Of a DNA stretch of 64,000 nt, positions 3,136 through 47,779 are shown piece after piece. A program made the position numbers and the translations under genes. Position 1 is the first letter of the stretch. Each line of letters begins with the position of its first letter. Location of the stretch: positions 412,249 through 476,248 of IMG/VR virus record IMGVR_UViG_3300018080_008436, one strand, 5' to 3'. The notes beneath the pieces are model-generated. The model saw only the letters and a list, made by a program, of their open reading frames with translations. It did not search any database and was not told the DNA's origin.

Positions 3136-3721
3136 AGTCGCTTCATACGTTGAGGCATTAAATGTAGCCAATATGGATGGCGAGATAAAGAAACCAGAAG
3201 TGCTTGGAGTTTTGCAATCTCTTCCATCCCCAAATCACATCAAAAGATACTTATCAAATGAAGAAGCAAGAGTCTTGTTTGAAAGCATCCGATGGATTTG
3301 GAAAGAAACAAGTGGTAAAGATATTAGTGAGACATTTAATTTCGAGCCTGCTCCAGAATCATTGCTAGGAAATTACTGGATGCTAAGGAATGGTCTGATC
3401 TTTCATGGTATCAACCATTATGGCATCATTAAAAGAAATATGACGCTCTTTTCTAACGTCCTGAAGTTAGAGCCGTTTGTACTGCATCAGAAGCTTGCAG
3501 GCATACCACAAGACCTAATTAAGTACGTTATAGACAATGGGGGGATGAGAATCTTCGTTACGGCTGACAAAAGAGCATATTTCCAAATGAATGATCAGGT
3601 TTATGCCAATTGGGGTAGGGCCAAAGTTAAAGGACTGGACTTCGGAAACAAAGTGGTCAAACTTGTTGACCCCACTACCCGATTTGACGGTTGGAACTCT
3701 GGAATTACCTTAAAACTCTAG
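3113..3721 (+). CDS. hypothetical protein
   Basis: 202-aa ORF overlapping the cca stop. Confidence 0.7.
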   Translation: MEDVTANEVASYVEALNVANMDGEIKKPEVLGVLQSLPSPNHIKRYLSNEEARVLFESIRWIWKETSGKDISETFNFEPAPESLLGNYWMLRNGLIFHGINHYGIIKRNMTLFSNVLKLEPFVLHQKLAGIPQDLIKYVIDNGGMRIFVTADKRAYFQMNDQVYANWGRAKVKGLDFGNKVVKLVDPTTRFDGWNSGITLKL

Positions 3722-5475
3722 TTCATAAAGAACGGGTCATCATCATCGTCGTCGTCATCAAATTCTACAGGTGGCAGATCTTCCTCAGGATGTTTTCTCT
3801 TAGGTGGCAATGGTTCGTCTTTCGTTGAAGGGCCAAACAATGATGCAAGTTCTGCTTCAAAATCTACATCATCCCATATCAACTCATCAAGATCTTCTTC
3901 TGCACCAGGAGAAAGTGGGTCTGATGGATCAACTTCTGCACCATCGATAGCATCTCCAGTACCTTCATCAATGTCACCAGCATCTTTGTCTTCTTCATCT
4001 GTTTCGGTTTCCCAGAAACCAGTTTCATCCAACTGATCTTTGAATCGATTCAGAATTTCTTTCGCTTCTTCTTGATCACTAATAATATAACTTGATGCTT
4101 CGAAAAGCTCTTGTACTGGTCCAGCACCCATATATCCAACCAATCCTAATCCAACGATATCTTCTGGTTTACATTGCATGAATCTTCTGAAGTTCTCAGG
4201 ACCAATCTGCATTTGCATTTGCTCATTTACCAATTCATCTGATTCTTTTAGAATGGCAATCGCCTCTTCCATCTCCAAAGGACGTTGTCCTCTGCTTGCT
4301 CTAGACTCATTGTCCAATTGGTGATCAGTTGCTTTTGAGAAAATACCCTTGGTAAGTTCCTGACAAATAATAATAAAGTTCATACCTTGAGCTACAGTGT
4401 TACCTTCATCATCATTATGACTCCAACCAGTTCCTTTTTGGCCTAACTGATCAGCCATCATCCTAACCATCTCTGGATCGATGTAATAAAAATGCTGACA
4501 CATCAAATTAGAGAACTTTTCATAAAGTCCTAAGAGTTGAGGATTAATGTCATTGATCGCACCTTGGACTTCTTCCATCTCAGTTACATCAAATAATTCA
4601 TTAAGTCCTGCGCCTTGAGCCAATGAATTCATGATGATGCGTTTGTTAATTTCACCTTCAAGTTCTGGAGTTATTTCAATATCTACTTCTGGGAAGTCTT
4701 CTTCACCTGAAGGACCCATCTCTTCCATATATTTGATTTCTAACTCATCCCTATCAACATTCCATTTACGAGAGATAACGTCTTTTGCGAGGTCCATCAA
4801 CTGCTCTTCATTTCCTTGTTCCAAAGCTTGGATTTCTCTAAGGAGTCCAAGAATCTGCATCATAACTTGTTGAATGTTAGTGTTTACAGGGATATCCTTC
4901 TCTTCTGCAATATTCGTAATATATTCATAGTTTGCGCGAGCTAGTTCATCACCATAATGAGAAAGCACTGGATTTTGAGAAAGGATATTGTTTTGAGGAA
5001 TATCTTGCCAGAAATTTCTTACACCTCTTTGTACTGAGGCATCGTAATCAGCGGCGGCGACCTTCTGTTCAAGAAGACGGATTTCGTAACCACTTATCTT
5101 TTTTTTTAACTCCGAAGTAATGGTCGGCAAGTTATCAGGGGATACTTGTGCGGCCAATGGAAGATCTTCTTCTGGTTCTTCAGCTTTAGGTTTTGGTTGT
5201 ACGATAGGTTTAGGATTACGTGGTCTTCTTTTCCCAGGTTTTCCAGGCTTAGTCTTTTCTCCTGGTGTAGTTCTGGGTTTGGTTGTTGGAGCGGCTGGAG
5301 CAGGTCCTGATCTTTCGGTTGATGGAGCAGGTTCAGCTTCTCTTACCATATCTTCTGCTTGAACAACTAAATTGCCATCTTCGTCTAGCCATCCAGCTTT
5401 TTTACCAAATTCTTCCCAATCTTTTTGAGACAATTTAACGGTCTTTTTGCCATTGGCGTTTTTTATAATTTTCAT
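3718..5475 (-). CDS. acidic hypothetical protein with shared N-terminal leader module; candidate internal virion protein
   Basis: 585 aa; begins MKIIKNANGKKTVKLSQKDWEEFGKKAGWL; AGG-N19-GAA motif upstream. Confidence 0.75.
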   Translation of the reverse strand: MKIIKNANGKKTVKLSQKDWEEFGKKAGWLDEDGNLVVQAEDMVREAEPAPSTERSGPAPAAPTTKPRTTPGEKTKPGKPGKRRPRNPKPIVQPKPKAEEPEEDLPLAAQVSPDNLPTITSELKKKISGYEIRLLEQKVAAADYDASVQRGVRNFWQDIPQNNILSQNPVLSHYGDELARANYEYITNIAEEKDIPVNTNIQQVMMQILGLLREIQALEQGNEEQLMDLAKDVISRKWNVDRDELEIKYMEEMGPSGEEDFPEVDIEITPELEGEINKRIIMNSLAQGAGLNELFDVTEMEEVQGAINDINPQLLGLYEKFSNLMCQHFYYIDPEMVRMMADQLGQKGTGWSHNDDEGNTVAQGMNFIIICQELTKGIFSKATDHQLDNESRASRGQRPLEMEEAIAILKESDELVNEQMQMQIGPENFRRFMQCKPEDIVGLGLVGYMGAGPVQELFEASSYIISDQEEAKEILNRFKDQLDETGFWETETDEEDKDAGDIDEGTGDAIDGAEVDPSDPLSPGAEEDLDELIWDDVDFEAELASLFGPSTKDEPLPPKRKHPEEDLPPVEFDDDDDDDDPFFMN

Positions 5476-23945: not shown

Positions 23946-26168
23946 TTACTCTTTTGGTGCTTGATTTTGAATAGCCATTTCCTTTTTCATAATTGTCTGC
24001 ACAATTTTACTCATTGCCTGCTGTGGCTGTTTCTCTATCTCACTATCTTTAAACCTTAAAACAGTCCAGCCCATCTGGGCAAGTTGCCTATCTCTTTCTT
24101 GGTCTTTTTGAATCTGTTTTGGAGAATTGTGAAAAATCTCTCCATCTGCTTCAATAATAAGTCTCAAATGAGGGAGGGCAAAGTCTACAGGATGTTCCAT
24201 ATTTCCTATCATAATCTTATACTGAGGGATAATAGGATATTTAATAATCCCGTCTTTTTGATGTTGAACCATATGATCCATCAATTCTCTTTCAATTTTT
24301 GTAAAAGCGATTCTCCCCTTCTCATCTCTTACCTGTCCATCTTTCCCTTGCGAATAGGAAGATGGTTTTGCGGTCTCTGAACGCATTTTCTTTTGCTCAG
24401 AAACTAATTTATCTCTGGTTTTCTTTTTCAAAACCTTTCCGCCAAATTGTGATGGATCAGCAACTTCCGCAGTCAATGGCCCTGTTTTTGCCAATACGGG
24501 TTCTCCACCTGTTGGTGCGGCTGGCGCTCCACCGAGATCTCCTCCTGGCTCAATAGGGGGTTCTCCCCCCATACCTCCCATTCCACCTCCAAGATCCATG
24601 CCTCCTGGCATTCCGCCGAAGCCACCACCCATGTCTCCTCCAGGCTGTTGCCCCATACCTTGTCCAAGGGCCATCATTTGAACGGCATCATAGCGTTTTC
24701 TTTCAATTTCTTGATCTGGGTCAATATCAAATGCTTCAAGAACAGTCTGCGCACTAACAAGACCCTTCTCGTACAATTGAATAATAAATGTTCTGTATTG
24801 CTGTTGATCTCTAAGATGCATGGAGTTCCATTTAATCTTAGGAACCAGATACTCTTCTTCTCCCGTCTCAGGATTTGTATCAATAAACCCTTGTCGTTTA
24901 GCTTCTGGGAGATATAGGAAATCTGTTATCCAATCAGCTATTTGACTTCTAAATGTGTCCAACCTGTGAATCATAGCTTCAATACCAACAGAAGCGCTTG
25001 CAAATGTTGGACCTTCACCATTAAGAAGAGCATTGTTAATCATCATACCATCAAGGACTTCCTGATTGATGAATTCAAACTCATTACTAAGAGTAAGAAC
25101 TTTGCCAGAAGCACCCACCCAGTCAAAATCAAATGCATGGTGTGTGACAATGGTAAGGTTAGGGTCATTAGCAGTTTCGGCAAGCTGTGCTTGTACAGCG
25201 GCAATATCGGCAGGTCCAGCAGGACGTTCATCACTACCGACTTTAACAATCTTAATAGGAACGATTAGACGTTCTGCAACGATCCACTGAGCTACCATGA
25301 GCTTAGTTTTATATGAAAGTATAGGGAATAATCTACGGACCATTCCGATTCCATAACGAGTATATCCACTTTCACCATATTTCAAGTGAGAAACGTTACG
25401 ATTATCTAATCGGATAGGCTGACCTGACGAAACAAGTGCGATTACATCTGGAGAAAGTTTCTCATATCCAGGTGTTTTTCTCTGGACCATATTGATGAGT
25501 TCTTCATCTGGTTTCAAAGCGATAATCGGGTCAGGATTTAAAGGTGGGGTATAGACATCTACAAAGTCAGGGTTAAGGATGACCATTCTTCTGACCGTTC
25601 CTCCCTCATGATCGCAAATAATATCTCCGACCATTCCAGAGCCTCCACAATGCTCACAATGGATTTCTGCAAATGGGAAGCAATCGCCAAGCAAATGGAC
25701 TTCATGACTTATCAAACGACACCATTTAGTCAGTTCGAGTCTTTTTTTGAATTTATCAAAGTATAACTTAATCTCTCTATCTTTACACTCATGTTCCCAA
25801 TCACTCATTGGAAAATAACTGTAGAAATCAATTGCAGAAGCTACCTTGGGTTCGTTTTCATAGAAGAATCTTGCCCATTGATATTGTTCTATTCTTTTAC
25901 TTGGGATCTGCCAGTTGATTGGAGTATGAACTGGGGAGAAAAATTGAGGCTGACCATAAATAGTTCCTGCACTTGCTACGGAACTAAATTTCGCCATACC
26001 ATTTCCCCATTGGGTACTGGCACCAGTCGTTGGGGCATAGTTTTGTCTTGGGATAGGTCGATATGATTGGTGCTGTGGAACCTCGCTGGTAGCGAGTTTA
26101 GCGGGATCTCTATTTCTTAATGCTCTAAAAGTCTCTTCTAGATTGGTAGTTTGTAGGTGAACTTGCAT
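23946..26168 (-). CDS. portal protein with C-terminal DUF559/Vsr-like endonuclease domain
   Basis: WARFFYENEPKVASAIDFYS, HLLGDCFPF, YGIGMVRR, IVPIKIVKVG portal-like core; Gly/Met/Pro linker; then PVDFALP..RLIIEADGEIFH...KDQERDRQL..GWTVLRF. Confidence 0.8.
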   Translation of the reverse strand: MQVHLQTTNLEETFRALRNRDPAKLATSEVPQHQSYRPIPRQNYAPTTGASTQWGNGMAKFSSVASAGTIYGQPQFFSPVHTPINWQIPSKRIEQYQWARFFYENEPKVASAIDFYSYFPMSDWEHECKDREIKLYFDKFKKRLELTKWCRLISHEVHLLGDCFPFAEIHCEHCGGSGMVGDIICDHEGGTVRRMVILNPDFVDVYTPPLNPDPIIALKPDEELINMVQRKTPGYEKLSPDVIALVSSGQPIRLDNRNVSHLKYGESGYTRYGIGMVRRLFPILSYKTKLMVAQWIVAERLIVPIKIVKVGSDERPAGPADIAAVQAQLAETANDPNLTIVTHHAFDFDWVGASGKVLTLSNEFEFINQEVLDGMMINNALLNGEGPTFASASVGIEAMIHRLDTFRSQIADWITDFLYLPEAKRQGFIDTNPETGEEEYLVPKIKWNSMHLRDQQQYRTFIIQLYEKGLVSAQTVLEAFDIDPDQEIERKRYDAVQMMALGQGMGQQPGGDMGGGFGGMPGGMDLGGGMGGMGGEPPIEPGGDLGGAPAAPTGGEPVLAKTGPLTAEVADPSQFGGKVLKKKTRDKLVSEQKKMRSETAKPSSYSQGKDGQVRDEKGRIAFTKIERELMDHMVQHQKDGIIKYPIIPQYKIMIGNMEHPVDFALPHLRLIIEADGEIFHNSPKQIQKDQERDRQLAQMGWTVLRFKDSEIEKQPQQAMSKIVQTIMKKEMAIQNQAPKE

Positions 26169-26209
26169 GCACACATTCCTGATTTAGATTTTTTTTATTA
26201 TACAAAATC

Positions 26210-33678: not shown

Positions 33679-36063
33679 TTACTCTCCAAAATCCAATATT
33701 TTATCTAATTCATACTTCTTAAAAAGTTCCTGGGCTTCCTCTTCATTGAGTGACTCTATCTTTGCCTTCGCAAACTGCAAGAAGTCAACAGAATACTTTT
33801 CCAAAAGAACGGGAGCGTATTTTCCAATAGCTTCCTCTAATTCACTATCAATATCAAGACCAAGCTTGATTGACAAATACAACGCTCTCAATATAATGAA
33901 TGGGTTGAATGACAATACATCATCTGCATCCATGACCGTTTCGATATAATTATCTCCATTAAAAGGAGTGATGAACGATCCAGTGTAAGGGTTATATCCT
34001 CTAGCATTAATAGTGAAATCCTTGTTGCAAATATCATGCAATACATGGCTGGAAGAATCAAGATCCTGTTTTTTCATCCATCTCTCGATAGTTGGGATCT
34101 TTTGTCCTCCATTGAAACAAATCTTCACGCCTTTGTGATTAAAACAAAAACATCTAGTTGCTGGATCAATCTCAGAGACCTGTTCTCCCAATTCTTCAGC
34201 CAACAAACTTCCGAATTTATGGCAGTTTTGGGATGAATCACTTGTAAATTCAAGTTCCTCAACTTCTGGAGATCTGTTCCCAAAAGATTTCTCTCTTGCA
34301 TAAGAACCGATAGCATAAACATCTTTGATATCGTATTCATGAGCCACACTCTTTGCGGCATCCATAATGCAACTAATAGCATCTTCAAGCGTTGGTCTGC
34401 AACCAACAACCTTTGACATAATCTCTCTTAGTTGTTCATCATTGTTCTGAATAGCATCTTCGACTTTTTCAATTTCTTCACTACCAACTCCCCTATGAAT
34501 CCAGCAGGAGTATATCTCTTCTCCATCGGACTCTCCCAAAGAAAACATATCGACTCCAATAGGACTGCGCCCCATTGACTTTTCAATAACTGACAACATA
34601 TCTTCACTACAAACAATCCTAGTTGCCTTCATATCGCCCCTAAGAATGATTGATCGTATTTTTCTCAACATATCAACAATATGTCCAAGCCCACCCGAAG
34701 CAAAACGTTTTGCAGGATGAGTGTTGCTTAAGTCTCTTGTTGAATCAAACCAACTCTCTGGTTTGAACCTTGGCTCGATCCATCTGTAATAAAACCCCTT
34801 GATGTCATATGTTGGGTTATATCTAGGTTGTGACTTTATCCAGTCCTCTTCTTCTGAAAAACATTCATCTCTGTCATCCCAGGCCATGACTCTGTCACCT
34901 AACCCAGGAATAGTTGATCCATCAGAAATTTCGAGATTATTGTACCACCCAAAAACTGTCGCCATCTTTGTCATCTTTGATGCTTGCTTTAAAGGCATCA
35001 TCAATGGTTGTGGTCTAGTATCTTCCAGAAGATCTTCAGTGATTCTATATCCAGTATCGTCTTTGAGCCTGTCTTTGTCAAGCAATTCTTCAAAAATGAG
35101 ATCAGGATCTAATTCCCAATCACCTTCAGTAAATTTCCTCAACTGAACTTCATAGATGTCATGTTCTGGAGATAGGTCTGGAGGGAGTGGAGCCTGATAC
35201 TGTCTGCCAAGCATTTCTTCGATTGCTCGATTTTGATATTGATGGGCGATCATACCCCAATCTGGTTGGGCCTGGAAATTTGCTCCATGATCACCATATC
35301 TTCCTGACAAATCAGATCCTGAGGGAGGATAGAATGGAAAGTGGCTTTGAGCTTCTTTATACCAATTATTTGAGGCTCCTTGCCTTAAACTTAGTTCACC
35401 CTCTATGCTGTATTTCTGCTGAATCTCTCTCATGGCAGATTCAAGTAATGCTGTCTCAACTTGAGTTGGACCTGCTTCGTCTTCTGCCCCTTTAGCATGA
35501 GTGGCTTCGTGAGCCATTGTAGCGGCCATGTGAGCTATCATAAGATCTTGTCTTAGCTCTGCATGCATTTCTGGTGGAACGATGTCCTGAAGGTTCCTAA
35601 AGGATTGCTCCATCTCATTACGAGTGTCTGCTACATTCAGTCCTAGAACTGATCCTCCTTTACTTTCTAGATCAGCATATACTTGCTGGATTTCATTACG
35701 GATAGTTTCTTGGTCTTTCTCTTCTTTAGTGTCATACGCTCGAAGCATTCCATCTTCTTCGACAATTTCATAACCTCTTGATTCAAGTCTTTTTTGAAGT
35801 TCTTGGGTTTTGACTGCCCTATCTAGTGACGGAACATAAACTCCATAAACACCAGCTTTCGCGAAGTTGAACATATAAACAATATTCTGCAAAAGATTTG
35901 AGTCGAATCGATTGACTAAGTCAACTGATTTCTGGGCATCGCCAAATTGGGAAGAGATGTTGGAGATGTTAACACTTGGGCTTCCGATCAAACTACCTTT
36001 ATACTCTGGAGCATCACCAGAGTAATACCCTCCGTAGTCTTGAGATACTTTTATGATTTTCAT
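33679..36063 (-). CDS. multidomain protein: MKIIKVSQ leader, HExxH domain and degenerate CCA/poly(A)-polymerase domain
   Basis: MAHEATH; internal NNWYKEAQ; VYAIGSYARE...ELEF...DICNKDFTINA...NPFIILRAL; AGG-N19-GAATAA at 36100-36124. Confidence 0.7.
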   Translation of the reverse strand: MKIIKVSQDYGGYYSGDAPEYKGSLIGSPSVNISNISSQFGDAQKSVDLVNRFDSNLLQNIVYMFNFAKAGVYGVYVPSLDRAVKTQELQKRLESRGYEIVEEDGMLRAYDTKEEKDQETIRNEIQQVYADLESKGGSVLGLNVADTRNEMEQSFRNLQDIVPPEMHAELRQDLMIAHMAATMAHEATHAKGAEDEAGPTQVETALLESAMREIQQKYSIEGELSLRQGASNNWYKEAQSHFPFYPPSGSDLSGRYGDHGANFQAQPDWGMIAHQYQNRAIEEMLGRQYQAPLPPDLSPEHDIYEVQLRKFTEGDWELDPDLIFEELLDKDRLKDDTGYRITEDLLEDTRPQPLMMPLKQASKMTKMATVFGWYNNLEISDGSTIPGLGDRVMAWDDRDECFSEEEDWIKSQPRYNPTYDIKGFYYRWIEPRFKPESWFDSTRDLSNTHPAKRFASGGLGHIVDMLRKIRSIILRGDMKATRIVCSEDMLSVIEKSMGRSPIGVDMFSLGESDGEEIYSCWIHRGVGSEEIEKVEDAIQNNDEQLREIMSKVVGCRPTLEDAISCIMDAAKSVAHEYDIKDVYAIGSYAREKSFGNRSPEVEELEFTSDSSQNCHKFGSLLAEELGEQVSEIDPATRCFCFNHKGVKICFNGGQKIPTIERWMKKQDLDSSSHVLHDICNKDFTINARGYNPYTGSFITPFNGDNYIETVMDADDVLSFNPFIILRALYLSIKLGLDIDSELEEAIGKYAPVLLEKYSVDFLQFAKAKIESLNEEEAQELFKKYELDKILDFGE

Positions 36064-37020: not shown

Positions 37021-38082
37021 TTATCTTGCTACTTGAATACCATTCTTTTCGCAAAATTCGATGGCGTATATTGAGAATACTCCAGCACTCAATCCGTAGT
37101 TGTCGTTGTCTCCAACAATTGCAGTTATTACTCCGATAACCTTACCATCATGACGATTGATAATTGGACCGCCACTGTTTCCTGGTAATATTGCGAGATC
37201 TAAAAACATGTATAGAGGTGCTCCATTATGAGAATAGATCTCCCTGTCAAGAGAGCTAACATAACCGAAAGTTGTGTTGTTTTCGAATCCATGAGGACTT
37301 CCAACTGCAAAAATTTCATCTCCGACATTAACGATTTGATCGAATTCAAAAGGTTTTGCATTGATATCGGCCTTCAGTAAAGCTAGGTCTTTAGCTCCAT
37401 CAAAGGCTATAACCTCTGCGTTAACCATCTGATCTCCATCTTTGATCAGTACCCTTATCATATCCTCATATTCAGAGAAGTCAAGCGAGCTTTCAGTATT
37501 TTTGTTGTAATTTTTTACGACATGGGCGCAAGTAAGGAAATAATTAGGGGCTACGCAGAAAGCAGAACCCGTTTCCTCAGTATTCGTGCTGAAGTTCTGT
37601 GACTTTACAACAAACGTCTTTTCAAGAGCCTCATCAACTTGATTTGGTTCTGGTTCAGCTTGCGCTACTCTAGAGATCCATTTGACAAGAACTCCCCTCT
37701 CTTCCATCTTTCTTCGATATTGTTGAGCCGATTCCAAAGATGGGAAAGTTTTATAGCCACCTCTAACCTTTAACTTCCAAACCTCTTTATCACCAGAATT
37801 ATTAGTAAGGTTTCTGAAGATGTCTAAATCTCTTTCTCTTCTTTTGTAATCGTCACCCTCATCTTTGTAAGATCCAGGTTGAGATTCTTCGTTCCTTGAC
37901 CAATCTCCCCAATCACCTTGTTGACCTGGGAGTTTATATTGTTTGCCAGTCAATACATCCCATATGGTATGCACATTATTGAAGGGCATAACGGATTTTG
38001 GAGTAGTGGGACTTAAGCCAGAGCCTGGATATAGAATCTCAGGCATTGTTGTGCGATAAGCTTTTTTCTTTTGTTTGCCCAT
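37021..38082 (-). CDS. trypsin-like (S1/HtrA-type) serine protease with N-terminal extension
   Basis: GSAF...FLTCAHVV, DLALLK, GNSGGP triad; AGG-N19-GAATAA at 38116-38140. Confidence 0.85.
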   Translation of the reverse strand: MGKQKKKAYRTTMPEILYPGSGLSPTTPKSVMPFNNVHTIWDVLTGKQYKLPGQQGDWGDWSRNEESQPGSYKDEGDDYKRRERDLDIFRNLTNNSGDKEVWKLKVRGGYKTFPSLESAQQYRRKMEERGVLVKWISRVAQAEPEPNQVDEALEKTFVVKSQNFSTNTEETGSAFCVAPNYFLTCAHVVKNYNKNTESSLDFSEYEDMIRVLIKDGDQMVNAEVIAFDGAKDLALLKADINAKPFEFDQIVNVGDEIFAVGSPHGFENNTTFGYVSSLDREIYSHNGAPLYMFLDLAILPGNSGGPIINRHDGKVIGVITAIVGDNDNYGLSAGVFSIYAIEFCEKNGIQVAR

Positions 38083-38140: not shown

Positions 38141-38971
38141 TTAGACTTCAATAAAGGCATCTCCAAGTTGATCTTCTTCATCAACTTCATCTGGAATGAA
38201 GGCATTTTCCACATCTTCATCTACAGGTTCTTCTTCATCGATAAAAGCATCTTCTACATCATCTCCGAAGATTTCATCAACATCTAGGAAATTTGCATCT
38301 GGTCTATCACCGAAAGCATTGTTTTTCATTTCAACCTGGGTTGCCTTGCCATTGCCAGCGCCAATAACAGCGGTTGTTCCCATTCTTTCAGATGGATCTA
38401 ACAAAGATTCATCGATGGGTGTTTCTTCCTCAACCTCTTCCCCTGCCTCTTCTGCATCAAGCTTTGCGGCGGCTTTCATGGATGCCTCACAACGAGGCTC
38501 ATTTTCATCAATTTCCCCATTCATCTTGTGAACCATCTCTTGAGTCTTAGGCCCTACATCAGTCATTACAACCACTTTCTCTTTTGGTTTTTCTTCCTTT
38601 TCAGCCTTCTTTTCAGTTTTCTTGCTTTTGCTCTTGCCTCTTCTTGACTTAGGCTTCCTTTTGGGCTTCTCTTCTTCAGCCTTTTCTTCAGGCTTTTCTT
38701 CAGGCTTTTCTTGGGGAGGTTCAGTGGTCAGAATCTCTTCTACCTTTTCTGCTTCTTTAGGTTTTTCTTCGATCACTTCCATACGAATCAAACCATAGTT
38801 GGCAACTTGTCTGAGTTCACTTGCTTGCGCTTCGTTTTCAACTTCGATATTTAAAGCGTAACTACATCCATCACATTTTTTAGGATTGGGGTCATATTTA
38901 CCCCTAAGCATCATGCCAATAGTGTTGAAGGAAATTGTAGCTTCTGTCAAACCATATACGTTAACTTTCAT
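38141..38971 (-). CDS. hypothetical protein with Lys/Glu-rich low-complexity segments
   Basis: 276-aa ORF; TGTATAAT upstream at ~39005-39012. Confidence 0.7.
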   Translation of the reverse strand: MKVNVYGLTEATISFNTIGMMLRGKYDPNPKKCDGCSYALNIEVENEAQASELRQVANYGLIRMEVIEEKPKEAEKVEEILTTEPPQEKPEEKPEEKAEEEKPKRKPKSRRGKSKSKKTEKKAEKEEKPKEKVVVMTDVGPKTQEMVHKMNGEIDENEPRCEASMKAAAKLDAEEAGEEVEEETPIDESLLDPSERMGTTAVIGAGNGKATQVEMKNNAFGDRPDANFLDVDEIFGDDVEDAFIDEEEPVDEDVENAFIPDEVDEEDQLGDAFIEV

Positions 38972-39208
38972 AATAAAACTCCCAATTTAGTCTTGGTGTT
39001 GTTTATTATACAAATTAACCGAGCAGATCTAACCCTATGTTTTTGTCTTGCATAAAGGTGTTGATGTGTTTAAGGAAAAGAGCTTTCTCTTGTGGAGTAA
39101 AAAATGCAGATGCAAGTAAACTACTCAACTCATCACTTGTCGCAGGGATATCATCCTCGTCAAACGATCTTTTGAATGAAACAAATGCTCGACTTACTTT
39201 CTGGTCAT

Positions 39209-40150
39209 CTACTTTTTTTTTGTAGCTTCAACGATTTGACGGTTTTTGAAATAATTGGATGCAAAGAGTCTATCTTCCTCATCCATTAGATCTTCTTCGT
39301 CTAAGTCAGTTACTTCAAAATCCTCACCCACTTCGTCAAGACCGATTTGGTAAGTTACAATGCCCTGACTAAGTTTTGAATCATCAAATGAAGCTAATGA
39401 AAATGGAATTTCGCCATGATGTTTGGACATGAAGTATTCCAAATCGTCAGCGATATCTTCCAAAGTCAAACTACTTGTATCGTTTGTACCAGTTATTTCA
39501 AGTTTACCAACAGCGGTAGGGGTTCCACCTATGTCAATCTCTTCGTAGTAGACTTCTTTAACAGCTTCTAGAACATCATCGTCGTCTCCGAGGTCTTCTA
39601 TTGGAAAATCAGGATCGATTTCATTAATTTCAAAGTCCTGTCCATAAGGATCATCTAGGATATCATCCATATTGTCTTCAAGACTACGATCACGTTCCAC
39701 ATAATCCCAATCAATATCCATTGACTGAGCTTTCTTCTCGAAAGCTATTTTAAGGCCATCTTCGCTTTTGATTTCCCACCATCTTTGTCGCTTGGGAGTT
39801 TCTGAGGCTGTCTCATACTCCTCTCCTTCGATATTGTAATCGGCCAATCGTTTCTCTTCAAGCTTATTCATATCACCTTCATAAGCTTGAGCATTTCTGT
39901 GTTTAGAACCAAATTCATCTTTGGCTTCATCTAGGTTTTTCTCAATAACAACTTCTGCACTACCAGTTCTGTTGTTTTCAAGAAGCTTTTCCATAACTGA
40001 ATCTTTGTCACCTACGTGATGAGGATCTAACTGCTTATCTGTAATTTCCTCTGGAATGTCGCCATGGGATTCTGACAACATGCGATCAGTATGGGCATCT
40101 TCATCTAATTTTTCATAGACTACAAATTTATATTCAGACATTTTATGCAC
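39209..40150 (-). CDS. acidic hypothetical head-associated protein; candidate -1 frameshift extension to 39015
   Basis: 313 aa ending ACA AAA AAA AAG TAG; AGG-N19-GAACAA at 40176-40200; LKIAFEKKAQ motif. Confidence 0.7.
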   Translation of the reverse strand: MHKMSEYKFVVYEKLDEDAHTDRMLSESHGDIPEEITDKQLDPHHVGDKDSVMEKLLENNRTGSAEVVIEKNLDEAKDEFGSKHRNAQAYEGDMNKLEEKRLADYNIEGEEYETASETPKRQRWWEIKSEDGLKIAFEKKAQSMDIDWDYVERDRSLEDNMDDILDDPYGQDFEINEIDPDFPIEDLGDDDDVLEAVKEVYYEEIDIGGTPTAVGKLEITGTNDTSSLTLEDIADDLEYFMSKHHGEIPFSLASFDDSKLSQGIVTYQIGLDEVGEDFEVTDLDEEDLMDEEDRLFASNYFKNRQIVEATKKK

Positions 40151-40200: not shown

Positions 40201-42036
40201 CTAAAATCTCATCCTAACAGTTACAGGTTCTGGAAGAGCAGGGTTCAGTCCATCAGTAGCAGAAGAAACAGCCCCTACTAAGCAATCAACTACATCATCT
40301 GTCTTCACATCTGCATTTTTATCTGGCAGAAGAGAAATTCCTCTTGCAATTCTTTTGAATTTTAAGTGTTGCATCTCTGCTAACATATATGAAGCATGTC
40401 CATCATCATCATAAAGATAAATTTCAGGATTTGGTTGATACTCCATCATCATCTTCATATTTCTATATAATTTCTGTTTAACACTTCTGTTATATTGAAT
40501 CTTTTGACAATTTACTCCATGACTCCTCAAAAACTGCAAACTGTGTACAGACTGAAAGTCATCATAAGTAACTCTCAATGGTCTAAAGATTTTGCAAATA
40601 GTTAGAACATCTCTATCAATCTCATGGAATTGTAATCCAATACCTGGAACTGGTTTCCAGATCCATACGCCAGCTAATTCAACCATCCATCTCTTTTCCC
40701 CCTGATTGTTTCTATATTTCTTAGCGGCAATCAAAACCATACTGAAGTTATTTCCGCCATTGGCTGGATCAACATGAGCATAATAATTGTATCCTGGTGC
40801 TGGTTTGGCATGAGGGCCAAGATCTGCCCTTACACATCTTTCAAGCAATCCTTCCTCAAAATAGTTACCATAAATACCGCCACTAGCCCATTGAGCGCCA
40901 TACTCAATAGCAAACATTTCTGGGTTACTCTCTCTATCACCAACCATCTCTTTGTTATAAAAATCAATATCATCATTTACACACCAAGTTGGCAACTGAA
41001 ACGATAAGATAGAATCATCTTCTAATGATCTTCGATACATATCATAGAAAATACCCATCCTATTGTTCGGTGATGATATCATCACTATTCGAGCCGCATT
41101 ATATTTGTAGAATTTAGATAATGATGGCTTTAATCTGTTGAAGAAATAGGTCCCTGTTACCTTACCACTCTCATCATAGAATGCAATCTCGTCAAACAGA
41201 ATAAGAATAGCACTATATCCAGCAAGTGAGTCTGGATTACTATGACCACAAAGAAGTAGAATAGATCCCGCAACTTCAATGTCAACTCCCTGACTTTTCT
41301 TTTCTAAGTCAGAGTCAGTATACAAACGAATCTCCGAAGAAATTGATTTAGCGATTCGTCCTTTGAAAAAAGGAGAGTTTCTAATTCTAGCCTGAATCTG
41401 TCCAAACAAACGTCCAGCCTGAGATTGTGACAAGGCAACATTAATAATTGCAATTTCATCATCACTAGGTAGATTATAGTAGCTATGGGGATTACCCTCA
41501 TTAATAACTAGTAACTTGTACGCTTCATACACAGTTATGATTGAAGCCATCAAGGTTTTACTTCCACGTCTACCTAAGACAAGATGCAACATACTAAAAT
41601 ATTCAGGTCGTCTGTCTTCTGGCTTCTTCCCCTCATTTTCATCATTCCCCTTGGCCTTCTCATCGTGGAACCTGTCCATCTCGATCATTTTTTTGATAAC
41701 CTCTTTGATGTTCCTTTCATAAGTAACACCTTCAAGAGTCTCATCTTCTTCATTACCGTAAAGCCACTCCCACTCTTCTTTATTGAGATGAAGGTCTTCA
41801 TTTCCTATAGTGTTCTTGTAGAAGCACTTAAGGATAACTCTTTGGGAAGTCCAGAGATCAAGCTGATTCTCTTCTGATGGTAAGTTTAGGTAGTCTGGAT
41901 GATCACAAAACGTTATGATATCGACTATCTCTTTGTAACCCTTGTTCTTTTTCAGAATCGGGTTTTTGGTATTAATCTGAAGTATTGCTTCTTCAAGTGG
42001 ATTAATAGCTTTCTGCTTCTTCTGGCGACTCGACAT
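40201..42036 (-). CDS. terL: terminase large subunit
   Basis: Walker A GRRGSKT, Walker B ILFDEIAF, motif III ISSP, EYGAQW, RNase H-like HVDPA and C-terminal DDVVD. Confidence 0.9.
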   Translation of the reverse strand: MSSRQKKQKAINPLEEAILQINTKNPILKKNKGYKEIVDIITFCDHPDYLNLPSEENQLDLWTSQRVILKCFYKNTIGNEDLHLNKEEWEWLYGNEEDETLEGVTYERNIKEVIKKMIEMDRFHDEKAKGNDENEGKKPEDRRPEYFSMLHLVLGRRGSKTLMASIITVYEAYKLLVINEGNPHSYYNLPSDDEIAIINVALSQSQAGRLFGQIQARIRNSPFFKGRIAKSISSEIRLYTDSDLEKKSQGVDIEVAGSILLLCGHSNPDSLAGYSAILILFDEIAFYDESGKVTGTYFFNRLKPSLSKFYKYNAARIVMISSPNNRMGIFYDMYRRSLEDDSILSFQLPTWCVNDDIDFYNKEMVGDRESNPEMFAIEYGAQWASGGIYGNYFEEGLLERCVRADLGPHAKPAPGYNYYAHVDPANGGNNFSMVLIAAKKYRNNQGEKRWMVELAGVWIWKPVPGIGLQFHEIDRDVLTICKIFRPLRVTYDDFQSVHSLQFLRSHGVNCQKIQYNRSVKQKLYRNMKMMMEYQPNPEIYLYDDDGHASYMLAEMQHLKFKRIARGISLLPDKNADVKTDDVVDCLVGAVSSATDGLNPALPEPVTVRMRF

Positions 42037-42853
42037 AATATTCCTCCAATATATAAACACAACCATTGTCTGATGGACAAAAGGTCAGAATTTTATTTCC
42101 AACCTTATATATTTCAAACAAATGAGTCGCATCTCCTTCAGAGGAAAGCATATGCACAGTATTGTCACTTAAAAAGAAAAGTTTGTTCTTGACATAATAT
42201 ATGTCTTTTAGGTCTTTGCAGTCATCGATAATTGTGTACGTTGAGTTTTTTCGTATCCCCCTTAAGCAATTGTTACCACTGTCTGCAAAACAGACAGTTT
42301 TTCCCATTATTGCAACTCCAGTTGGTTTAGAAATCCTCGTATTTTTTAAATTTGATATTGAGAATCCAGCCTTACCACAACCTATAAGTGGAAAGGCGTT
42401 CTCCTCATTCATTATAAAGCATCTGTGACAATTTGTAGTGCTCCAGATGACTTGATTTTCTAATGAAGTTACATAAGTCCTTGAGTCGCTTCTTCCAAGG
42501 ACTTTTCTTCTAAATTGTTTAGCACTGTTTTTTGAGATCAAATTCTCAAAATCCATCAACTCCAAATCGACTTTGTGAATTCGGCTACCACCTTCTGAAA
42601 CTATATATAAACAATCATAACTGGAATTATAGCATATCGAACTGAAAGTTGAAAAGTCTGGCTTCTCAGTATATGTGAGTTCATAACGCCAATCAGGATT
42701 GCAGTCGCCATTATTCATCTTTCCTATGCCATCATCATGTAGGAAAAACAGATTATCCCCAACACAACAAAAATCCTTGATCTCGAAGTTGATCTCGAAA
42801 TTTCGTTGTTTTCGGGTGGTAAGGTTCTTTTCTGTAAGTTTATAGATCATCAA
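42002..42853 (-). CDS. NHL-repeat/beta-propeller-like protein
   Basis: KPTGVAI...FADSGNNCLR NHL-like repeat. Confidence 0.55.
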   Translation of the reverse strand: MMIYKLTEKNLTTRKQRNFEINFEIKDFCCVGDNLFFLHDDGIGKMNNGDCNPDWRYELTYTEKPDFSTFSSICYNSSYDCLYIVSEGGSRIHKVDLELMDFENLISKNSAKQFRRKVLGRSDSRTYVTSLENQVIWSTTNCHRCFIMNEENAFPLIGCGKAGFSISNLKNTRISKPTGVAIMGKTVCFADSGNNCLRGIRKNSTYTIIDDCKDLKDIYYVKNKLFFLSDNTVHMLSSEGDATHLFEIYKVGNKILTFCPSDNGCVYILEEYYVESPEEAESY

Positions 42854-44275: not shown

Positions 44276-47200
44276 TTACGAGTCTTTTTCGCTTAGCTTC
44301 TCACGTATGGATACTCCAAGTGCTCCGCTTTCACAATGACCGCCTGAGCAAGCGTCTCCAGCCCCGCCACCATAATTGTCTAAATTGCCATATTCATCTT
44401 CATAACATCCTGACCAGTCAACATCAATATATGTTCTAGTCAGATCTAACCACTTCTTCCAGTTCGCGACATCTTTAAGGCAATATGTCATTTTTCTAAC
44501 ATCACCTTCAAAATAGCGATCTGCAAATTGTTTTGCCCTTCTGACCCAATCCAATTTTTCTTTGTAGTTTTCTACATTATGGTTAAGCCAAGCTTCAAGT
44601 AGTTTGTCTGGAGAGTCAGGGGACAATCCTTCGTTTTTCCACTTGATCCCATTTGTTTCAAAATCTCTGGAGATCTTATTTCTTAAAGGATCAACATAGA
44701 TAATCTCTCCAATGCCAAGCAAACAATCACAAGCTTCCCAAAGATTGTCTTTAAATACTCTCAATCCGTCAACAATAAGACCGCTGGCGAATAAACTGCC
44801 ATCCCCATACTCTCTGACGATCTCTGTGATGGTCATAACTGCCGTAAAAGGCGCTTGAGGGTAATCTTTGTCCCCAGACATAGGTAACATAGAAATTCCC
44901 GCATAATACCTTCTATTGCGATAAATGTGGTTAGCAACATCATCCCATTCATGTGGCTTGATGTTAATAGTGTTTGATACATTATGTCTTAGCCAAGGAT
45001 AAATAGCCGTATCATGTCTTGTCCCTGACTCAACCCAATTCTGTTGAGTAAGCTTAACATTCTCAAGAAGAGTTATGGCACCGACCTGATTTTTGGTTTT
45101 GGCTCCATCAGGAACTTCGCATAAGAAGGTAATAACAACATCAGTGTTATTATTTGACCATACTGATTCTTCGATAGCATCTGGGTTATGTTTTTCAAAA
45201 TATTTCAGCGGAGTCTCAAGTTTGTTTGCTTGAACTCTCCTGAAATATCTTTTGGCATGATGAGGATGAATCCCAGATGCAGTTCCCAAAACACAACTCG
45301 TAGATCCAGCAGGCTTAACACATGTAGCTCTTGCACATAAATTGATGCCAAGTATTCCTGCAATCTTCTCATTAGTTTTAAGAATAAGTTTAGCACCCTT
45401 CCTTTGTAATGCAGGATCAAAGGCCATATCAGGATTATCTGCCATACCTGTCATAGAAACACCGAGAAGTGCCTCAAGCTTTACGATTTCCTGAGTGATG
45501 TTGCCCAAATAATGAAAGGTATCATACGAAGCTTGAATAGTGCCAATGATTGCCGCCGCTTTACAAGAGTCAAGAAAATCCTCTTCGGTTTTAACCTTCT
45601 TTACATTGATCTCACATAAATTGCAAAATTGCCATCCGCTAAGATATTCATTATTGTCCTGAGCGATAACAGCAGAGGCAAATTCTTTGCGGAATTGATC
45701 ATTCAAAGGGAGCTTTGGGACCATGCCGATTTCAACACAGTTATGTACATAAACTCCGTTTCCATCGAACGCATGAACAACGGGAACAGTACAATCATAT
45801 ACTTTTTCAATCCCCTTACTCTCTTTAGAGGCAACTGTAGCTATGAATTTACTCTTATTTGGTTTTCTTTTATATTGACTCAACAAACTATCAAGTTTTT
45901 GAATTTTATATGGTTCTGAAAACCCGATCCTATTTCTATAAACCCAAATAGATTCATTTGAAATAACAAGTTCATGGGCCGTTTGGCAAAAATAATCTTT
46001 TTTACCACCTTTTCCGTCAGGCATTGGTTTAAAACCCTCACCTCTACGGTTTTTATAAACTTTAGACACAATACCAAGGCGGAGGAGCATCCTTTGTACA
46101 GTTTTTAAATTGTTAAGAGAGATGCTGTGTAAACGTATTGACATCCCCTTCTTTAAATCGCCCTGGACAGATCCATCTGCATCAAAATACCCCTGAAGGA
46201 ACCCTCTATACATATCTGAAGAACTTCCCTCTATTTTACACCCTATCTCCTTTTCACCACGTTTTATTCCGTAGTATTCTGCCATCTTTTTTAACCCAGA
46301 AGAATATAACCTTAATTTACCGACATTTGACGTTTGTTTTCCTCCTGTCATTTCTTTATATGTATGAAGTCCTGACATTTTTATTCTTTTGATAGCCATC
46401 TTCATCATATGAGACCTTGACTCTCCCCAATAGTCAAGCAATGCACTATTTTTAGTAAAGGTTCCGTCCCCAAGCAAACTGCCCAACAACCAACCTTTAT
46501 CAAAGGTTTCATGAAACCCTTCTCCCTTCCATGTAAGATTTTGGTGATTATGTAAAACTATTTGATCTCCAACGTTTAGGTCTTTCAGTTCAACCCAACC
46601 CTCTGGAGTCATTATCTGGTGATTACTGGTCGCCTCTATGCAAAATCCCTCTTTAGTTTCTAAACCAAAAAGCTCTTTTTCCCCAGTTTCAAACATCCCC
46701 TTTTTTGTAGTAGGATATACTTGACCATCAACTATTGCTCCAAACTGTTTGCCCAAAAGATTTTTTGCTTTCTTCGGGCCATGATCTGTCATAACCCAAG
46801 TGTCACCACTAACACATGGATTATAAACGATGTCATTACTTTCTGCCCAAACGAAGCCTGGTTCACCAAATTCTTTGTTCAATTCAATGAATTTCATGAA
46901 CTGCTCTTTGGAGGTTTCGCTTCGCACTAAAATAACAGAATTATTTGATCTTCCTCTTTGAGGATTCTCTTTGCGCCAAGCGCCAGTTTTGGCTTTTGCC
47001 ATCTCTTCGTCTTCAGGAGAGAATAAACAAATAGATGCACTGCGGCGAATTCCACCAGACAAAACAGCATCAGAGGAATGCATCATGATATCATAAGCAT
47101 CAATTGGCCTAAGACAGTCACCAAACTTACAACATCTATTAAGCAGAACATTGATATTATATAGTGATATTTTCAGTCCATCTGGTCCAGGGGCCTTGCT

Positions 47201-47779
47201 TCCTGAGGAAATTGGAGCACCTTCTGGTCGAATTTGGGAAAAATCGAAGATCACTTCATATCCTTGATATTCTGGGAAAGGAACGTCATCTCCAATAAAA
47301 AATGAAGATAACAAAACCCCGACAGAATCGGCCCATCCTTCGATGCTGTCTGGGATTACGAAAGTCTTAGTCCCTTTAGTCGGGTTGGCTATGCCAGGAA
47401 GCTTCGCGACATGGTGGGTTTGAACTGAAAATCCGATTCCACAACCACAAAGTAAAAGGAACATACCTTCTTGAAAAAATCTTGGTCTGTCACAATACGA
47501 GACCGTACAATTGTATAACTTCTCATGCTTGTCTAGAATTGGTTTCCCCCCAAACTGCAATGCCCTTTGAGATCCAAGAACCCTTTTTCTTCGAACCATT
47601 CGTTCTGCGAAATCCATTTCTTCTTTTAATTGCTCACAAATCTCTGGCCCAAGCTTCTTTCGATGCATGTCAAATACTCTAGTGACTTGTTCTTCCCAAG
47701 TCTCTCGTCTTTTCATCTCAGGTAGGTATTTGGCATACTTCGAAAAACGTGTATATTCTTGAAGTGCTCTGACGGACAT
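44276..47779 (-). CDS. nrdJ: class II (adenosylcobalamin-dependent) ribonucleotide reductase with intein
   Basis: RRETWEE, YNCTV, GCGIGFSV, GGIRRSA, GEPGF, NP[intein]CVEI, CNLCEIN, TCVKPAGS, HNVSNT and C-terminal CSGGHCE. Confidence 0.9.
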   Translation of the reverse strand: MSVRALQEYTRFSKYAKYLPEMKRRETWEEQVTRVFDMHRKKLGPEICEQLKEEMDFAERMVRRKRVLGSQRALQFGGKPILDKHEKLYNCTVSYCDRPRFFQEGMFLLLCGCGIGFSVQTHHVAKLPGIANPTKGTKTFVIPDSIEGWADSVGVLLSSFFIGDDVPFPEYQGYEVIFDFSQIRPEGAPISSGSKAPGPDGLKISLYNINVLLNRCCKFGDCLRPIDAYDIMMHSSDAVLSGGIRRSASICLFSPEDEEMAKAKTGAWRKENPQRGRSNNSVILVRSETSKEQFMKFIELNKEFGEPGFVWAESNDIVYNPCVSGDTWVMTDHGPKKAKNLLGKQFGAIVDGQVYPTTKKGMFETGEKELFGLETKEGFCIEATSNHQIMTPEGWVELKDLNVGDQIVLHNHQNLTWKGEGFHETFDKGWLLGSLLGDGTFTKNSALLDYWGESRSHMMKMAIKRIKMSGLHTYKEMTGGKQTSNVGKLRLYSSGLKKMAEYYGIKRGEKEIGCKIEGSSSDMYRGFLQGYFDADGSVQGDLKKGMSIRLHSISLNNLKTVQRMLLRLGIVSKVYKNRRGEGFKPMPDGKGGKKDYFCQTAHELVISNESIWVYRNRIGFSEPYKIQKLDSLLSQYKRKPNKSKFIATVASKESKGIEKVYDCTVPVVHAFDGNGVYVHNCVEIGMVPKLPLNDQFRKEFASAVIAQDNNEYLSGWQFCNLCEINVKKVKTEEDFLDSCKAAAIIGTIQASYDTFHYLGNITQEIVKLEALLGVSMTGMADNPDMAFDPALQRKGAKLILKTNEKIAGILGINLCARATCVKPAGSTSCVLGTASGIHPHHAKRYFRRVQANKLETPLKYFEKHNPDAIEESVWSNNNTDVVITFLCEVPDGAKTKNQVGAITLLENVKLTQQNWVESGTRHDTAIYPWLRHNVSNTINIKPHEWDDVANHIYRNRRYYAGISMLPMSGDKDYPQAPFTAVMTITEIVREYGDGSLFASGLIVDGLRVFKDNLWEACDCLLGIGEIIYVDPLRNKISRDFETNGIKWKNEGLSPDSPDKLLEAWLNHNVENYKEKLDWVRRAKQFADRYFEGDVRKMTYCLKDVANWKKWLDLTRTYIDVDWSGCYEDEYGNLDNYGGGAGDACSGGHCESGALGVSIREKLSEKDS
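45740..46816 (-). mobile_element. 359-aa intein with LAGLIDADG homing endonuclease, inserted before the catalytic Cys of RNR
   Basis: Begins CVSGDT, block B ATSNHQI, WLLGSLLGDG and FLQGYFDADG motifs, ends VYDCTV...VHN followed by C. Confidence 0.92.

What the first reader, a model, noticed from the sequence alone, without database searches (positions are those of the whole stretch)
39015..39221. Canonical A_AAA_AAG slippery site extends a head-region protein by 65 aa
Seen: ORF 39209-40150 ends ACA AAA AAA AAG TAG (A9G). The -1 frame is closed by TGA just upstream of the run, then reads VDDQKVSRAFVSFKRSFDEDDIPATSDELSSLLASAFFTPQEKALFLKHINTFMQDKNIGLDLLG* to 39015. This fills an otherwise empty 200-bp gap and ends next to the following gene's TATAAT. 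Known: A_AAA_AAG is the dnaX/IS-type bacterial -1 shift site. Inference: two isoforms of the protein encoded downstream of terL, outside the usual tail-chaperone context.
Basis: partly seen in the sequence, partly recalled or inferred. Interest (0 to 1): 0.65.

Follow-up and report, generated by a model that had tools for sequence, protein, structure and literature searches.

The report
Conserved A9 slippage site, two isoforms
A gene next to the large terminase of a 476-kb uncultivated phage needs a one-base slip on a run of nine A's to add a 65-residue three-helix domain; 35 distant relatives keep this arrangement, and what they conserve is the A9 run, not the dnaX-type heptamer.

Summary
ORF 40141-39209 (minus strand, 310 aa) ends ACA AAA AAA AAG TAG. 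The -1 frame then runs 65 codons to 39015.

The recoding is real. In 35 non-duplicate metagenomic relatives (extension identity averaging 36%), the homologous domain lies in the -1 frame behind an A-run. It is never in the +1 frame and is open in 35 of 35. There is no start codon at the junction in 33 of 35. One relative encodes the fusion in frame with A7.

The conserved element is A9 or A10, never shorter. The next base is T in 15 loci, G in 13 and C in 7. The preceding codon encodes S, T, V, I or L but ends in A in 30 of 30 loci (P about 3e-15). There is no upstream Shine-Dalgarno-like motif and no downstream hairpin.

I therefore favour RNA polymerase slippage, as in Thermus dnaX. Ribosomal -1 slippage on the same run is not excluded.

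Relatives also carry A9 at two other domain boundaries, either in frame or frame-breaking.

The protein's function is unknown. It has no family or fold match. It sits in a conserved block: terL, this gene, an unknown gene, an HtrA-like protease. No RNA data were available.

The parts
39209..40141 (-). Zero-frame ORF, the short isoform: 310 aa, acidic, ending ...EATKKK followed by TAG. The ORF listing gives a GTG start at 40150, but homologues begin at the ATG (MSEYKF).
39213..39221 (-). A9 homopolymer, the slippage site and the element conserved across the family. It starts at the third position of codon ACA.
39212..39218 (-). It is present here, but G at the last position occurs in only 13 of 35 relatives.
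39209..39211 (-). Zero-frame TAG stop, one base after the run. A stop lies 0-1 nt after the run in 29 of 35 relatives.
39228..39230 (-). TGA that closes the -1 frame two codons before the run. Entry into the -1 frame must therefore happen within the run.
39015..39212 (-). The -1-frame extension: 65 codons (39018-39212) plus TAA (39015-39017). The homologous segment of P0016 is modelled as a three-helix bundle with pLDDT 94-97. There is no start-capable codon at the junction.
40201..42066 (-). Large terminase subunit. It lies directly upstream in 19 of 19 relatives that have enough flank.
38141..38971 (-). Next gene, 276 aa, unknown. It starts 44 nt after the stop of the extension.
37021..38082 (-). 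HtrA/DegP-like trypsin-fold serine protease. It is found downstream in 18 of 18 relatives that have enough flank.

Best explanation
This is a programmed, conserved recoding site, and the operative signal is the A9 homopolymer.

Most transcripts and ribosomes read ACA AAA AAA AAG TAG and release a 310-aa protein ending in KKK. A fraction of products continue into the -1 frame and gain a 65-residue three-helix domain, giving 375 aa with the junction ...TKKK-VDDQ....

I think the slip is made mainly by RNA polymerase. The polymerase realigns on the nine-base A:T hybrid and inserts one extra A into the mRNA, which is then translated normally. Thermus thermophilus dnaX and several Shigella type III secretion genes work this way. 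A -1 ribosomal slip on the same run would give the identical protein here and may contribute.

Shown:
- the anatomy of the site;
- conservation of the run and of the trans-frame domain;
- absence of an independent start;
- absence of the dnaX-type stimulators.

Inferred:
- that two isoforms are actually made;
- which machine slips;
- that the isoform ratio matters, with the extension acting as a docking module carried by only a subset of the molecules.
For: Conservation of the arrangement:
- In 35 non-duplicate loci from many metagenomes the extension domain is in the -1 frame behind an A-run. It is never in the +1 frame behind an A-run.
- The run is 9 A in 30 loci and 10 A in 5, never shorter.
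- The extension is open in 35 of 35. Mean amino-acid identity is 36%, and nucleotide differences by codon position are 0.51, 0.36 and 0.61, the pattern of a coding frame.
- There is no start-capable codon at the junction in 33 of 35.
- Natural in-frame versions exist: L088/P0018 with A7 and L058.

Why the run rather than the heptamer:
- The base after A9 is T in 15, G in 13 and C in 7 loci.
- The codon before the run encodes S, T, V, I or L but ends in A in 30 of 30, against a background of 33% (P about 3e-15).
- Both Lys codons are always AAA, although AAA makes up only 67% of Lys codons elsewhere in these genes.
- No SD-like motif lies upstream. Downstream folding is no better than in control windows: mean z is -0.18 against +0.09, and the window's own sequence gives -2.7 kcal/mol with z +1.5.
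- There is no Rfam element.

Enrichment:
- There are 43 runs of A9 or longer in 47 kb of this gene family, against 4 in 138 kb of flanks.
- Relatives carry A9 at two other domain boundaries. Some are in frame, with a -1-frame stop right after the run; some are frame-breaking.

Literature:
- Bacterial RNA polymerase slips efficiently at runs of 9 A or T. The RNA-DNA hybrid is 9-10 bp. Thermus dnaX uses such a run. [quoted passage not shown]
- Frameshift yield rises with poly-A length: 10% at A7, 40% at A9 and 63% at A11 (PMC3711429).
Against: - No RNA or protein data exist for this phage. No RNA run holds the sequence, so neither the isoforms nor the slipping machine has been observed.
- In 30 of 35 loci the run starts at codon position 3. 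That phase gives two in-phase heptamers (A_AAA_AAA and A_AAA_AAN), and even a ten-base motif on which E-, P- and A-site tRNAs could all re-pair. A purely ribosomal mechanism could therefore also select for A9.
- A zero-frame stop directly after the run (29 of 35) is a known kind of ribosomal stimulator.
- The polymerase that transcribes this gene is unknown.
Confidence: 0.55

Rival explanations
1. This is the reader's reading: classical -1 programmed ribosomal frameshifting. tRNA-Lys in the P and A sites slips back one base on A_AAA_AAG, or on A_AAA_AAA one codon earlier. The adjacent zero-frame stop may help. The mRNA is colinear with the DNA.
For: - The heptamer is in the correct phase in the window.
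- Every family member has an in-phase A_AAA_AAN heptamer, the shift is always -1, and the run starts at codon position 3 in 30 of 35.
- A stop lies 0-1 nt after the run in 29 of 35.
- A_AAA_AAG is the E. coli dnaX site, and some phage frameshifts work without stimulators (PMC5009743).
Against: - The efficient G-ending heptamer occurs in only 13 of 35 loci. 22 have C or T, which is much less shifty in E. coli (PMC5009743).
- Three bases that the heptamer does not need are invariant at nucleotide level.
- There is no SD-like motif and no hairpin.
- At the in-frame A9 sites of relatives, the adjacent stop lies in the -1 frame. It cannot act as a zero-frame stimulator there.
- The phage carries its own tRNA-Lys(CUU) as well as two tRNA-Lys(UUU). 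By established knowledge, a dedicated AAG reader reduces slipping on AAG.
Confidence: 0.33
2. DNA-level phase variation. Replication slippage switches the phage population between A9 genomes (short protein) and A10 genomes (long protein), so each genome makes only one form.
For: - Poly-A tracts are slippery for DNA polymerases too (PMC3711429).
- One relative, P0016, is recorded as an in-frame fusion whose KKK-I junction implies one extra A. Its DNA could not be fetched.
Against: - All assemblies of this phage give A9: the window, L001/L010 and the X1 contig at depth 62.
- 30 of 35 divergent lineages sit at exactly A9 with the extension out of frame. A free on/off switch would be sampled in both states.
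- The stop directly after the run and the short +1-frame tails look designed to give a clean short product.
Confidence: 0.05
3. Not a functional feature. The candidates are an assembly error in a homopolymer, a decaying gene, an independently initiated small ORF, or read-through of TAG by the phage's CUA-anticodon tRNA.
For: - Homopolymers are error-prone.
- The genome encodes a tRNA with anticodon CUA.
Against: - The same A9-plus-stop architecture, with an intact and conserved -1 domain, is found in 35 lineages.
- There is no start codon at the junction.
- Reading through TAG in the zero frame adds only five codons before a TAA and never reaches the extension.
- TAG behaves as an ordinary stop genome-wide: 95 of 588 crude genes end in it, and the distance to the next stop is the same as for the other stop codons.
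Confidence: 0.02

Closest known systems
Thermus thermophilus dnaX (tau/gamma) and the two-ORF dnaX genes with 10 A: programmed transcriptional realignment
   Same: A run of 9-10 A inside a coding sequence, with no elaborate stimulators, gives two proteins that share an N-terminus and differ at the C-terminus. Run length is what is conserved (PMC5009743, PMC3711429).
   Different: That is a cellular replication gene, and slipping there gives the shorter product. Here slipping gives the longer product in a phage gene of unknown function. Slippage has been shown experimentally for Thermus but not here.
E. coli dnaX / IS-element A_AAA_AAG -1 ribosomal frameshift
   Same: The window carries the identical heptamer in the right phase, and the shift is -1.
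   Different: dnaX needs an upstream SD-like element and a downstream stem-loop. Both are absent here. The G is not conserved in relatives, whereas three extra A's are.
Shigella type III secretion genes (spa13, mxiE, spa33, mxiA) and Citrobacter rodentium tssM: transcriptional slippage on A/T runs
   Same: Homopolymer slippage yields a C-terminally extended variant alongside the short one, in genes for large assemblies (PMC5009743, PMC4256274).
   Different: Those are bacterial secretion-system genes. The family here has the run at up to three alternative domain boundaries, and its polarity flips between lineages.
Phage two-isoform structural genes: lambda gpG/gpGT tail chaperone; capsid extensions in Lactobacillus phage A2, Listeria phage PSA and T7 gene 10 (T7 from my own knowledge)
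   Same: A minority of molecules receive a C-terminal domain by a frame change near the end of the ORF. Some lineages encode the fusion directly (PMC5009743, PMC10885494).
   Different: The gene is not upstream of a tape measure and is not a capsid protein. It sits between terL and an HtrA-like protease. The signal is A9 rather than a heptamer with or without a pseudoknot.

Membership tests
dnaX/IS-type -1 programmed ribosomal frameshift site | X_XXY_YYZ heptamer in zero-frame phase, with an open -1 frame behind it | tested here: met
   A_AAA_AAG lies at 39212-39218, and the -1 frame is open for 65 codons.
dnaX/IS-type -1 programmed ribosomal frameshift site | The specific heptamer A_AAA_AAG is the conserved element | tested here: not met
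   G follows the run in 13 of 35 loci, T in 15 and C in 7. The conserved unit is A9 or longer.
dnaX/IS-type -1 programmed ribosomal frameshift site | Stimulators: an internal SD-like motif about 10 nt upstream, and a stem-loop or pseudoknot 5-8 nt downstream | tested here: not met
   No SD-like motif in the window, and one in only 5 of 35 relatives. Downstream MFE z-scores match those of control windows. No Rfam hit.
dnaX/IS-type -1 programmed ribosomal frameshift site | The slip occurs on the ribosome, with mRNA colinear with DNA | not testable with these tools
   No RNA run holds the locus.
Programmed transcriptional realignment (Thermus dnaX / Shigella type) | Homopolymeric A or T run of about 9 or more, the length of the RNA-DNA hybrid | tested here: met
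   A9 in the window. A9 or A10 in 35 of 35 relatives, never shorter at a frame-breaking junction.
Programmed transcriptional realignment (Thermus dnaX / Shigella type) | Run length conserved at nucleotide level, independently of the encoded residues and of codon phase | tested here: met
   The preceding codon is S, T, V, I or L but ends in A in 30 of 30 (P about 3e-15). Runs occur in codon phases 1, 2 and 3. The in-frame A9 sites keep nine A's while the encoded residues vary.
Programmed transcriptional realignment (Thermus dnaX / Shigella type) | mRNA population heterogeneous in run length while the DNA is homogeneous | not testable with these tools
   Only DNA runs were found, and they are kept as contigs.
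Phage tail assembly chaperone G/GT-type frameshift | A pair of overlapping ORFs immediately upstream of the tape measure gene | tested here: not met
   terL lies upstream in 19 of 19 loci, and an HtrA-like protease lies downstream in 18 of 18.
Phase-variable contingency locus (DNA slippage) | Run-length polymorphism among near-identical genomes | tested here: inconclusive
   Three assemblies and a depth-62 contig all give A9. These are consensus sequences, and raw reads were not available.

The most novel reading that the evidence does not exclude
In this clade of huge phages, A9 tracts may act as a movable, evolvable isoform switch read by RNA polymerase. The same gene family places the tract at any of three domain boundaries. 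It uses the tract either in frame (slip gives a truncated product) or out of frame (slip gives an extended product). Elsewhere it replaces the tract with gene fission or fusion. If confirmed, this would be, as far as the held library shows, the first programmed transcriptional slippage described for a gene of a dsDNA phage packaging/head block. It would also be a natural series for studying how isoform ratios evolve.
Probability: 0.45. Interest if true: 0.7.

Novelty: new member of a known kind. Interest (0 to 1): 0.58.

Why it matters
- Gene callers split or truncate this gene in every relative. Nearly all database entries end at KKK or KKN, so a conserved 65-residue domain is missing from protein catalogues of huge phages.
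- The family gives 35 independent natural replicates of an A9 site, plus in-frame, fused and split variants. That is good material for separating transcriptional from ribosomal slippage and for asking why the isoform ratio matters.
- The case shows that a canonical-looking A_AAA_AAG can be incidental to a longer homopolymer signal.
- The protein itself has no known family or fold match and sits next to terL. A two-isoform design points to a stoichiometric role in an assembly, which virion proteomics could test.

Tried and rejected
Searches that found nothing:
- blastn of the locus against 50,697 phage records: no match.
- Pfam, PHROGs and NCBIfam on the protein, the extension and 30 homologues: no family.
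- Family profile against PDB sequences: no hit.
- ESM Atlas: its own model is poor (pLDDT 0.39) and there was no usable hit.
- Foldseek against BFVD and PDB, VIA-align wide, and Atlas by shape, all on the AlphaFold model. Nothing stood above background. The extension gives Z of at most 6.8, as a generic three-helix bundle would. The alpha/beta domain gives Z 6.5 to a ribosomal S6-like fold.
- Rfam: no match.

Data that were not available:
- DNA of the in-frame relative P0016 could not be fetched.
- No RNA runs hold the locus. The DNA runs are contigs only. X2 and X3 look like one data set filed twice, and their contig ends 19 nt past the run, so it does not count as bridging it.

Ideas rejected:
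- That the 794-aa neighbour is the capsid protein, which would have placed the gene in a head module. It belongs to a PolyA_pol-like nucleotidyltransferase family.
- That the extension is an independent gene. Rejected for the window and for 33 of 35 relatives, although L053/L054 do encode the domain in a separate small ORF with its own ATG.
- Amber read-through by the phage's CUA tRNA.

Side lead that went nowhere:
- A search for relatives of the second A9-bearing gene (586 aa) found only the same phage.

Tools and options not used:
- The large representative protein search, because the claim does not rest on an absence of relatives.
- Complex prediction, because no binding claim is made.
- Any alternative genetic code.

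Full report
**The observation**

On the minus strand the ORF that begins MSEYKF at ATG 40141 ends ...GAA GCT ACA AAA AAA AAG TAG.
- The A-run is 39213-39221, G is at 39212, and TAG is at 39209-39211.
- The ORF listing offers a GTG start at 40150.
- The -1 frame is closed by TGA at 39228-39230.
- The next gene starts at 38971.

The window is the last 64 kb of a 476,248-base virus record with 39% G+C. That genome holds only five A or T runs of nine or more.

**Is it real?**

The protein has no match in phage GenBank records or in Pfam, PHROGs or NCBIfam. A word search did find 31 homologues. Nearly all of them end in KKK or KKN.

The first distant relative I read was L003, whose protein is 47% identical. 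It ends GTA AAA AAA AAG TAG, and its -1 frame encodes a 65-residue homologue of the extension, 38% identical with no gaps.

A metagenome scan then gave 78 loci. I built an HMM of the extension and located it in all forward frames. The results for the 35 non-duplicate loci that have a frame-breaking junction are:
- The domain is always in the -1 frame relative to the N-terminal ORF.
- The overlap always contains an A-run of 9 (30 loci) or 10 (5 loci).
- The extension frame has no stop in 35 of 35, while the other two frames average 5.8 and 9.1 stops.
- Mean amino-acid identity is 36%.
- Nucleotide differences by codon position are 0.51, 0.36 and 0.61, the pattern of a translated frame.
- No start-capable codon lies between the upstream -1-frame stop and 15 codons past the run in 33 of 35.

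L088 (P0018) encodes the fusion directly with TCA AAA AAA CTA GAT, a run of seven. L058 is also fused in frame.

An assembly error, a pseudogene and a separate gene are therefore excluded for the window. Independent assemblies of this phage also give A9 (X1 contig at depth 62). Only consensus contigs were available, and X1 may be the source sample.

**What the conserved signal is**

- The base after the run is T in 15 loci, G in 13 and C in 7. In the -1 frame this base is the first position of a Val, Leu or Ile codon.
- The run is never shorter than nine.
- In the 30 loci where the run starts at codon position 3, the preceding codon is TCA, ACA, GTA, ATA or TTA. That is five different amino acids, always with the A-ending codon, against 33% A-ending for those residues elsewhere in the same genes (P about 3e-15).
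- The two Lys codons are always AAA, although AAG makes up a third of Lys codons elsewhere.
- There are 43 runs of nine or more A in 47 kb of this gene family, against 4 in 138 kb of flanking sequence.
- No Shine-Dalgarno-like motif lies upstream.
- The 50 nt downstream fold no better than control windows: mean z is -0.18 against +0.09, and the window's own sequence gives -2.7 kcal/mol with z +1.5.
- Rfam finds nothing.

**Further sites in relatives**

Many relatives carry a second A9.
- Seven lineages (L003, L007, L022, L025, L037, L040, L081) have an in-frame A9 or A10 just after the conserved N-terminal domain. In four of them a stop follows in the -1 frame immediately after the run. The encoded residues vary (Q or E, then KK, then T, S or N), but the nine A's are kept.
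- In L055, L060 and L084 an A9 at the same boundary breaks the frame, and everything downstream, including the extension, is in -1.
- L020 has a frame-breaking A9 before the central alpha/beta domain and an in-frame A9 at the extension junction.
- In L068, L071, L073, L080 and L085 the N-terminal domain is a separate gene with no A-run.
- In L053 and L054 the extension domain sits in its own small ORF.

The family therefore makes 'with' and 'without' versions of its modules by every available route, and A9 is the recurrent device. At the in-frame sites the adjacent stop is met only after the slip. Its role there is to end the short product cleanly, not to stall a zero-frame ribosome.

**Mechanism**

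Published work supplies four relevant facts.
- Bacterial RNA polymerase slips efficiently on runs of nine A or T, and the hybrid is 9-10 bp.
- Thermus dnaX uses such a run productively.
- Frameshift yield in reporters rises with poly-A length: 10% at A7, 40% at A9 and 63% at A11. Runs longer than 7 A or 8 T are classed as transcriptional realignment sites (PMC3711429).

These facts fit three features of this family: a strict length of nine or more, an indifferent tenth base, and no stimulators. They point to insertion of one A by RNA polymerase, which puts the extension in frame.

I cannot exclude ribosomal -1 slippage.
- The predominant phase gives two in-phase heptamers.
- A zero-frame stop lies next to the run in 29 of 35 loci.
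- The two routes give the same protein in the window.

The phage encodes tRNA-Lys(CUU) as well as two tRNA-Lys(UUU). By established knowledge, that should reduce slipping on AAG. I put transcriptional slippage at about 0.55, ribosomal at about 0.33, DNA-level phase variation at about 0.05, and artefact at about 0.02. No RNA run holds the locus, so the question stays open.

**What the protein is**

The AlphaFold2 model of the in-frame relative P0016, built with a 60-row alignment, has mean pLDDT 70.6. Along the chain it shows:
- a low- to medium-confidence helical N-terminal region;
- a disordered acidic linker;
- a confident alpha/beta domain at residues 190-270;
- a linker that contains the KKK;
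- a three-helix bundle at residues 296-349 (pLDDT 94-97), which is the extension.

Structure searches gave nothing above background.

Gene order is conserved. A 283-aa ORF and terL lie upstream (terL in 19 of 19 loci). An unknown gene of about 270 aa and an HtrA-like serine protease lie downstream (protease in 18 of 18). The 794-aa gene further on belongs to a PolyA_pol-like nucleotidyltransferase family and is not a capsid protein. The portal is 13 kb away.

'Head-region protein' is therefore only a positional guess. My inference is that the extension is a docking module carried by a set fraction of the molecules, as in other two-isoform assembly proteins.

**Comparison and novelty**

The kind is known: recoding on a homopolymer that gives two C-terminal variants. 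The closest parallels are:
- Thermus dnaX and the 10-A two-ORF dnaX genes;
- the Shigella type III secretion genes;
- Citrobacter tssM (PMC4256274);
- functionally, lambda gpG/gpGT and the frameshifted capsid extensions.

The site fails the tests for a dnaX-type ribosomal site, both on stimulators and on conservation of the heptamer. It is not a tail-chaperone pair. It meets the sequence-level criteria of programmed transcriptional realignment. The defining mRNA heterogeneity could not be tested.

A library search found no paper that links transcriptional slippage with jumbo or huge phages. That is weak evidence of novelty. I file the finding as a new member of a known kind, in an uncharacterised phage family, with the unusual feature that the site moves between domain boundaries and flips polarity.

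**Limits**

- All evidence is comparative and computational.
- The relatives are metagenomic contigs.
- The raw reads behind the homopolymer could not be inspected.
- The protein's function is unknown.

Noticed in passing
window 5099-5107 (minus strand), inside ORF 3718-5475: This is the only other sense-strand A9 in a coding region of the 476-kb genome: TTA AAA AAA AAG ATA, in frame, about 125 codons into a 586-aa ORF with no Pfam hit. A -1 slip here would give a 12-residue tail and then a stop, so it may be a second isoform site that makes a truncated product. No relatives other than the same phage were found.
   Followed up: partly
outside the window: G000:C1:409748-409822 (complement), about 2.4 kb before the window start: The genome carries 59 predicted tRNAs. 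One has anticodon CUA, an amber suppressor type that ARAGORN labels Pyl. TAG nevertheless behaves as an ordinary stop: 95 of 588 crude genes end in it, and the distance to the next stop is unremarkable.
   Followed up: partly
L009:4850-5470: In this relative the homologous ORF has an in-frame TAG at 4904 and continues in the same frame to the usual A9-G-TAG junction at 5263. This is either a sequencing error or a lineage that reads TAG as sense. In the second case, the TAG after the run would not terminate the short form there.
   Followed up: no
window 33679-36063 (minus strand): This 794-aa protein belongs to a large, well-conserved family (about 40% identity over 150 or more members). Many members carry a PolyA_pol nucleotidyltransferase head domain. 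One homologue (P0135) is fused to a trypsin-like protease domain, which links it functionally to the neighbouring HtrA-like protease gene.
   Followed up: partly
window 23946-26174 (minus strand): This is the portal protein (phrog_16240, E = 1.6e-47). It has a C-terminal stretch of about 100 residues that matches HNH-endonuclease-type PHROGs, an unusual appendage for a portal.
   Followed up: no
window 44276-47779 (minus strand); L003:1059-3917: The 1167-aa ORF matches ribonucleotide reductase in two separate stretches, with unrelated sequence in between, which suggests an intein or an insertion. The terL homologue in L003 is 952 aa against 621 aa here, which likewise suggests an insertion.
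   Followed up: no
L053:5289-5627 and L054: In these relatives the extension domain is encoded by a separate ORF of about 112 aa with its own ATG, which overlaps the stop of the upstream gene (TAAAATG). There is no A-run. The domain can therefore also function as a free-standing protein.
   Followed up: partly
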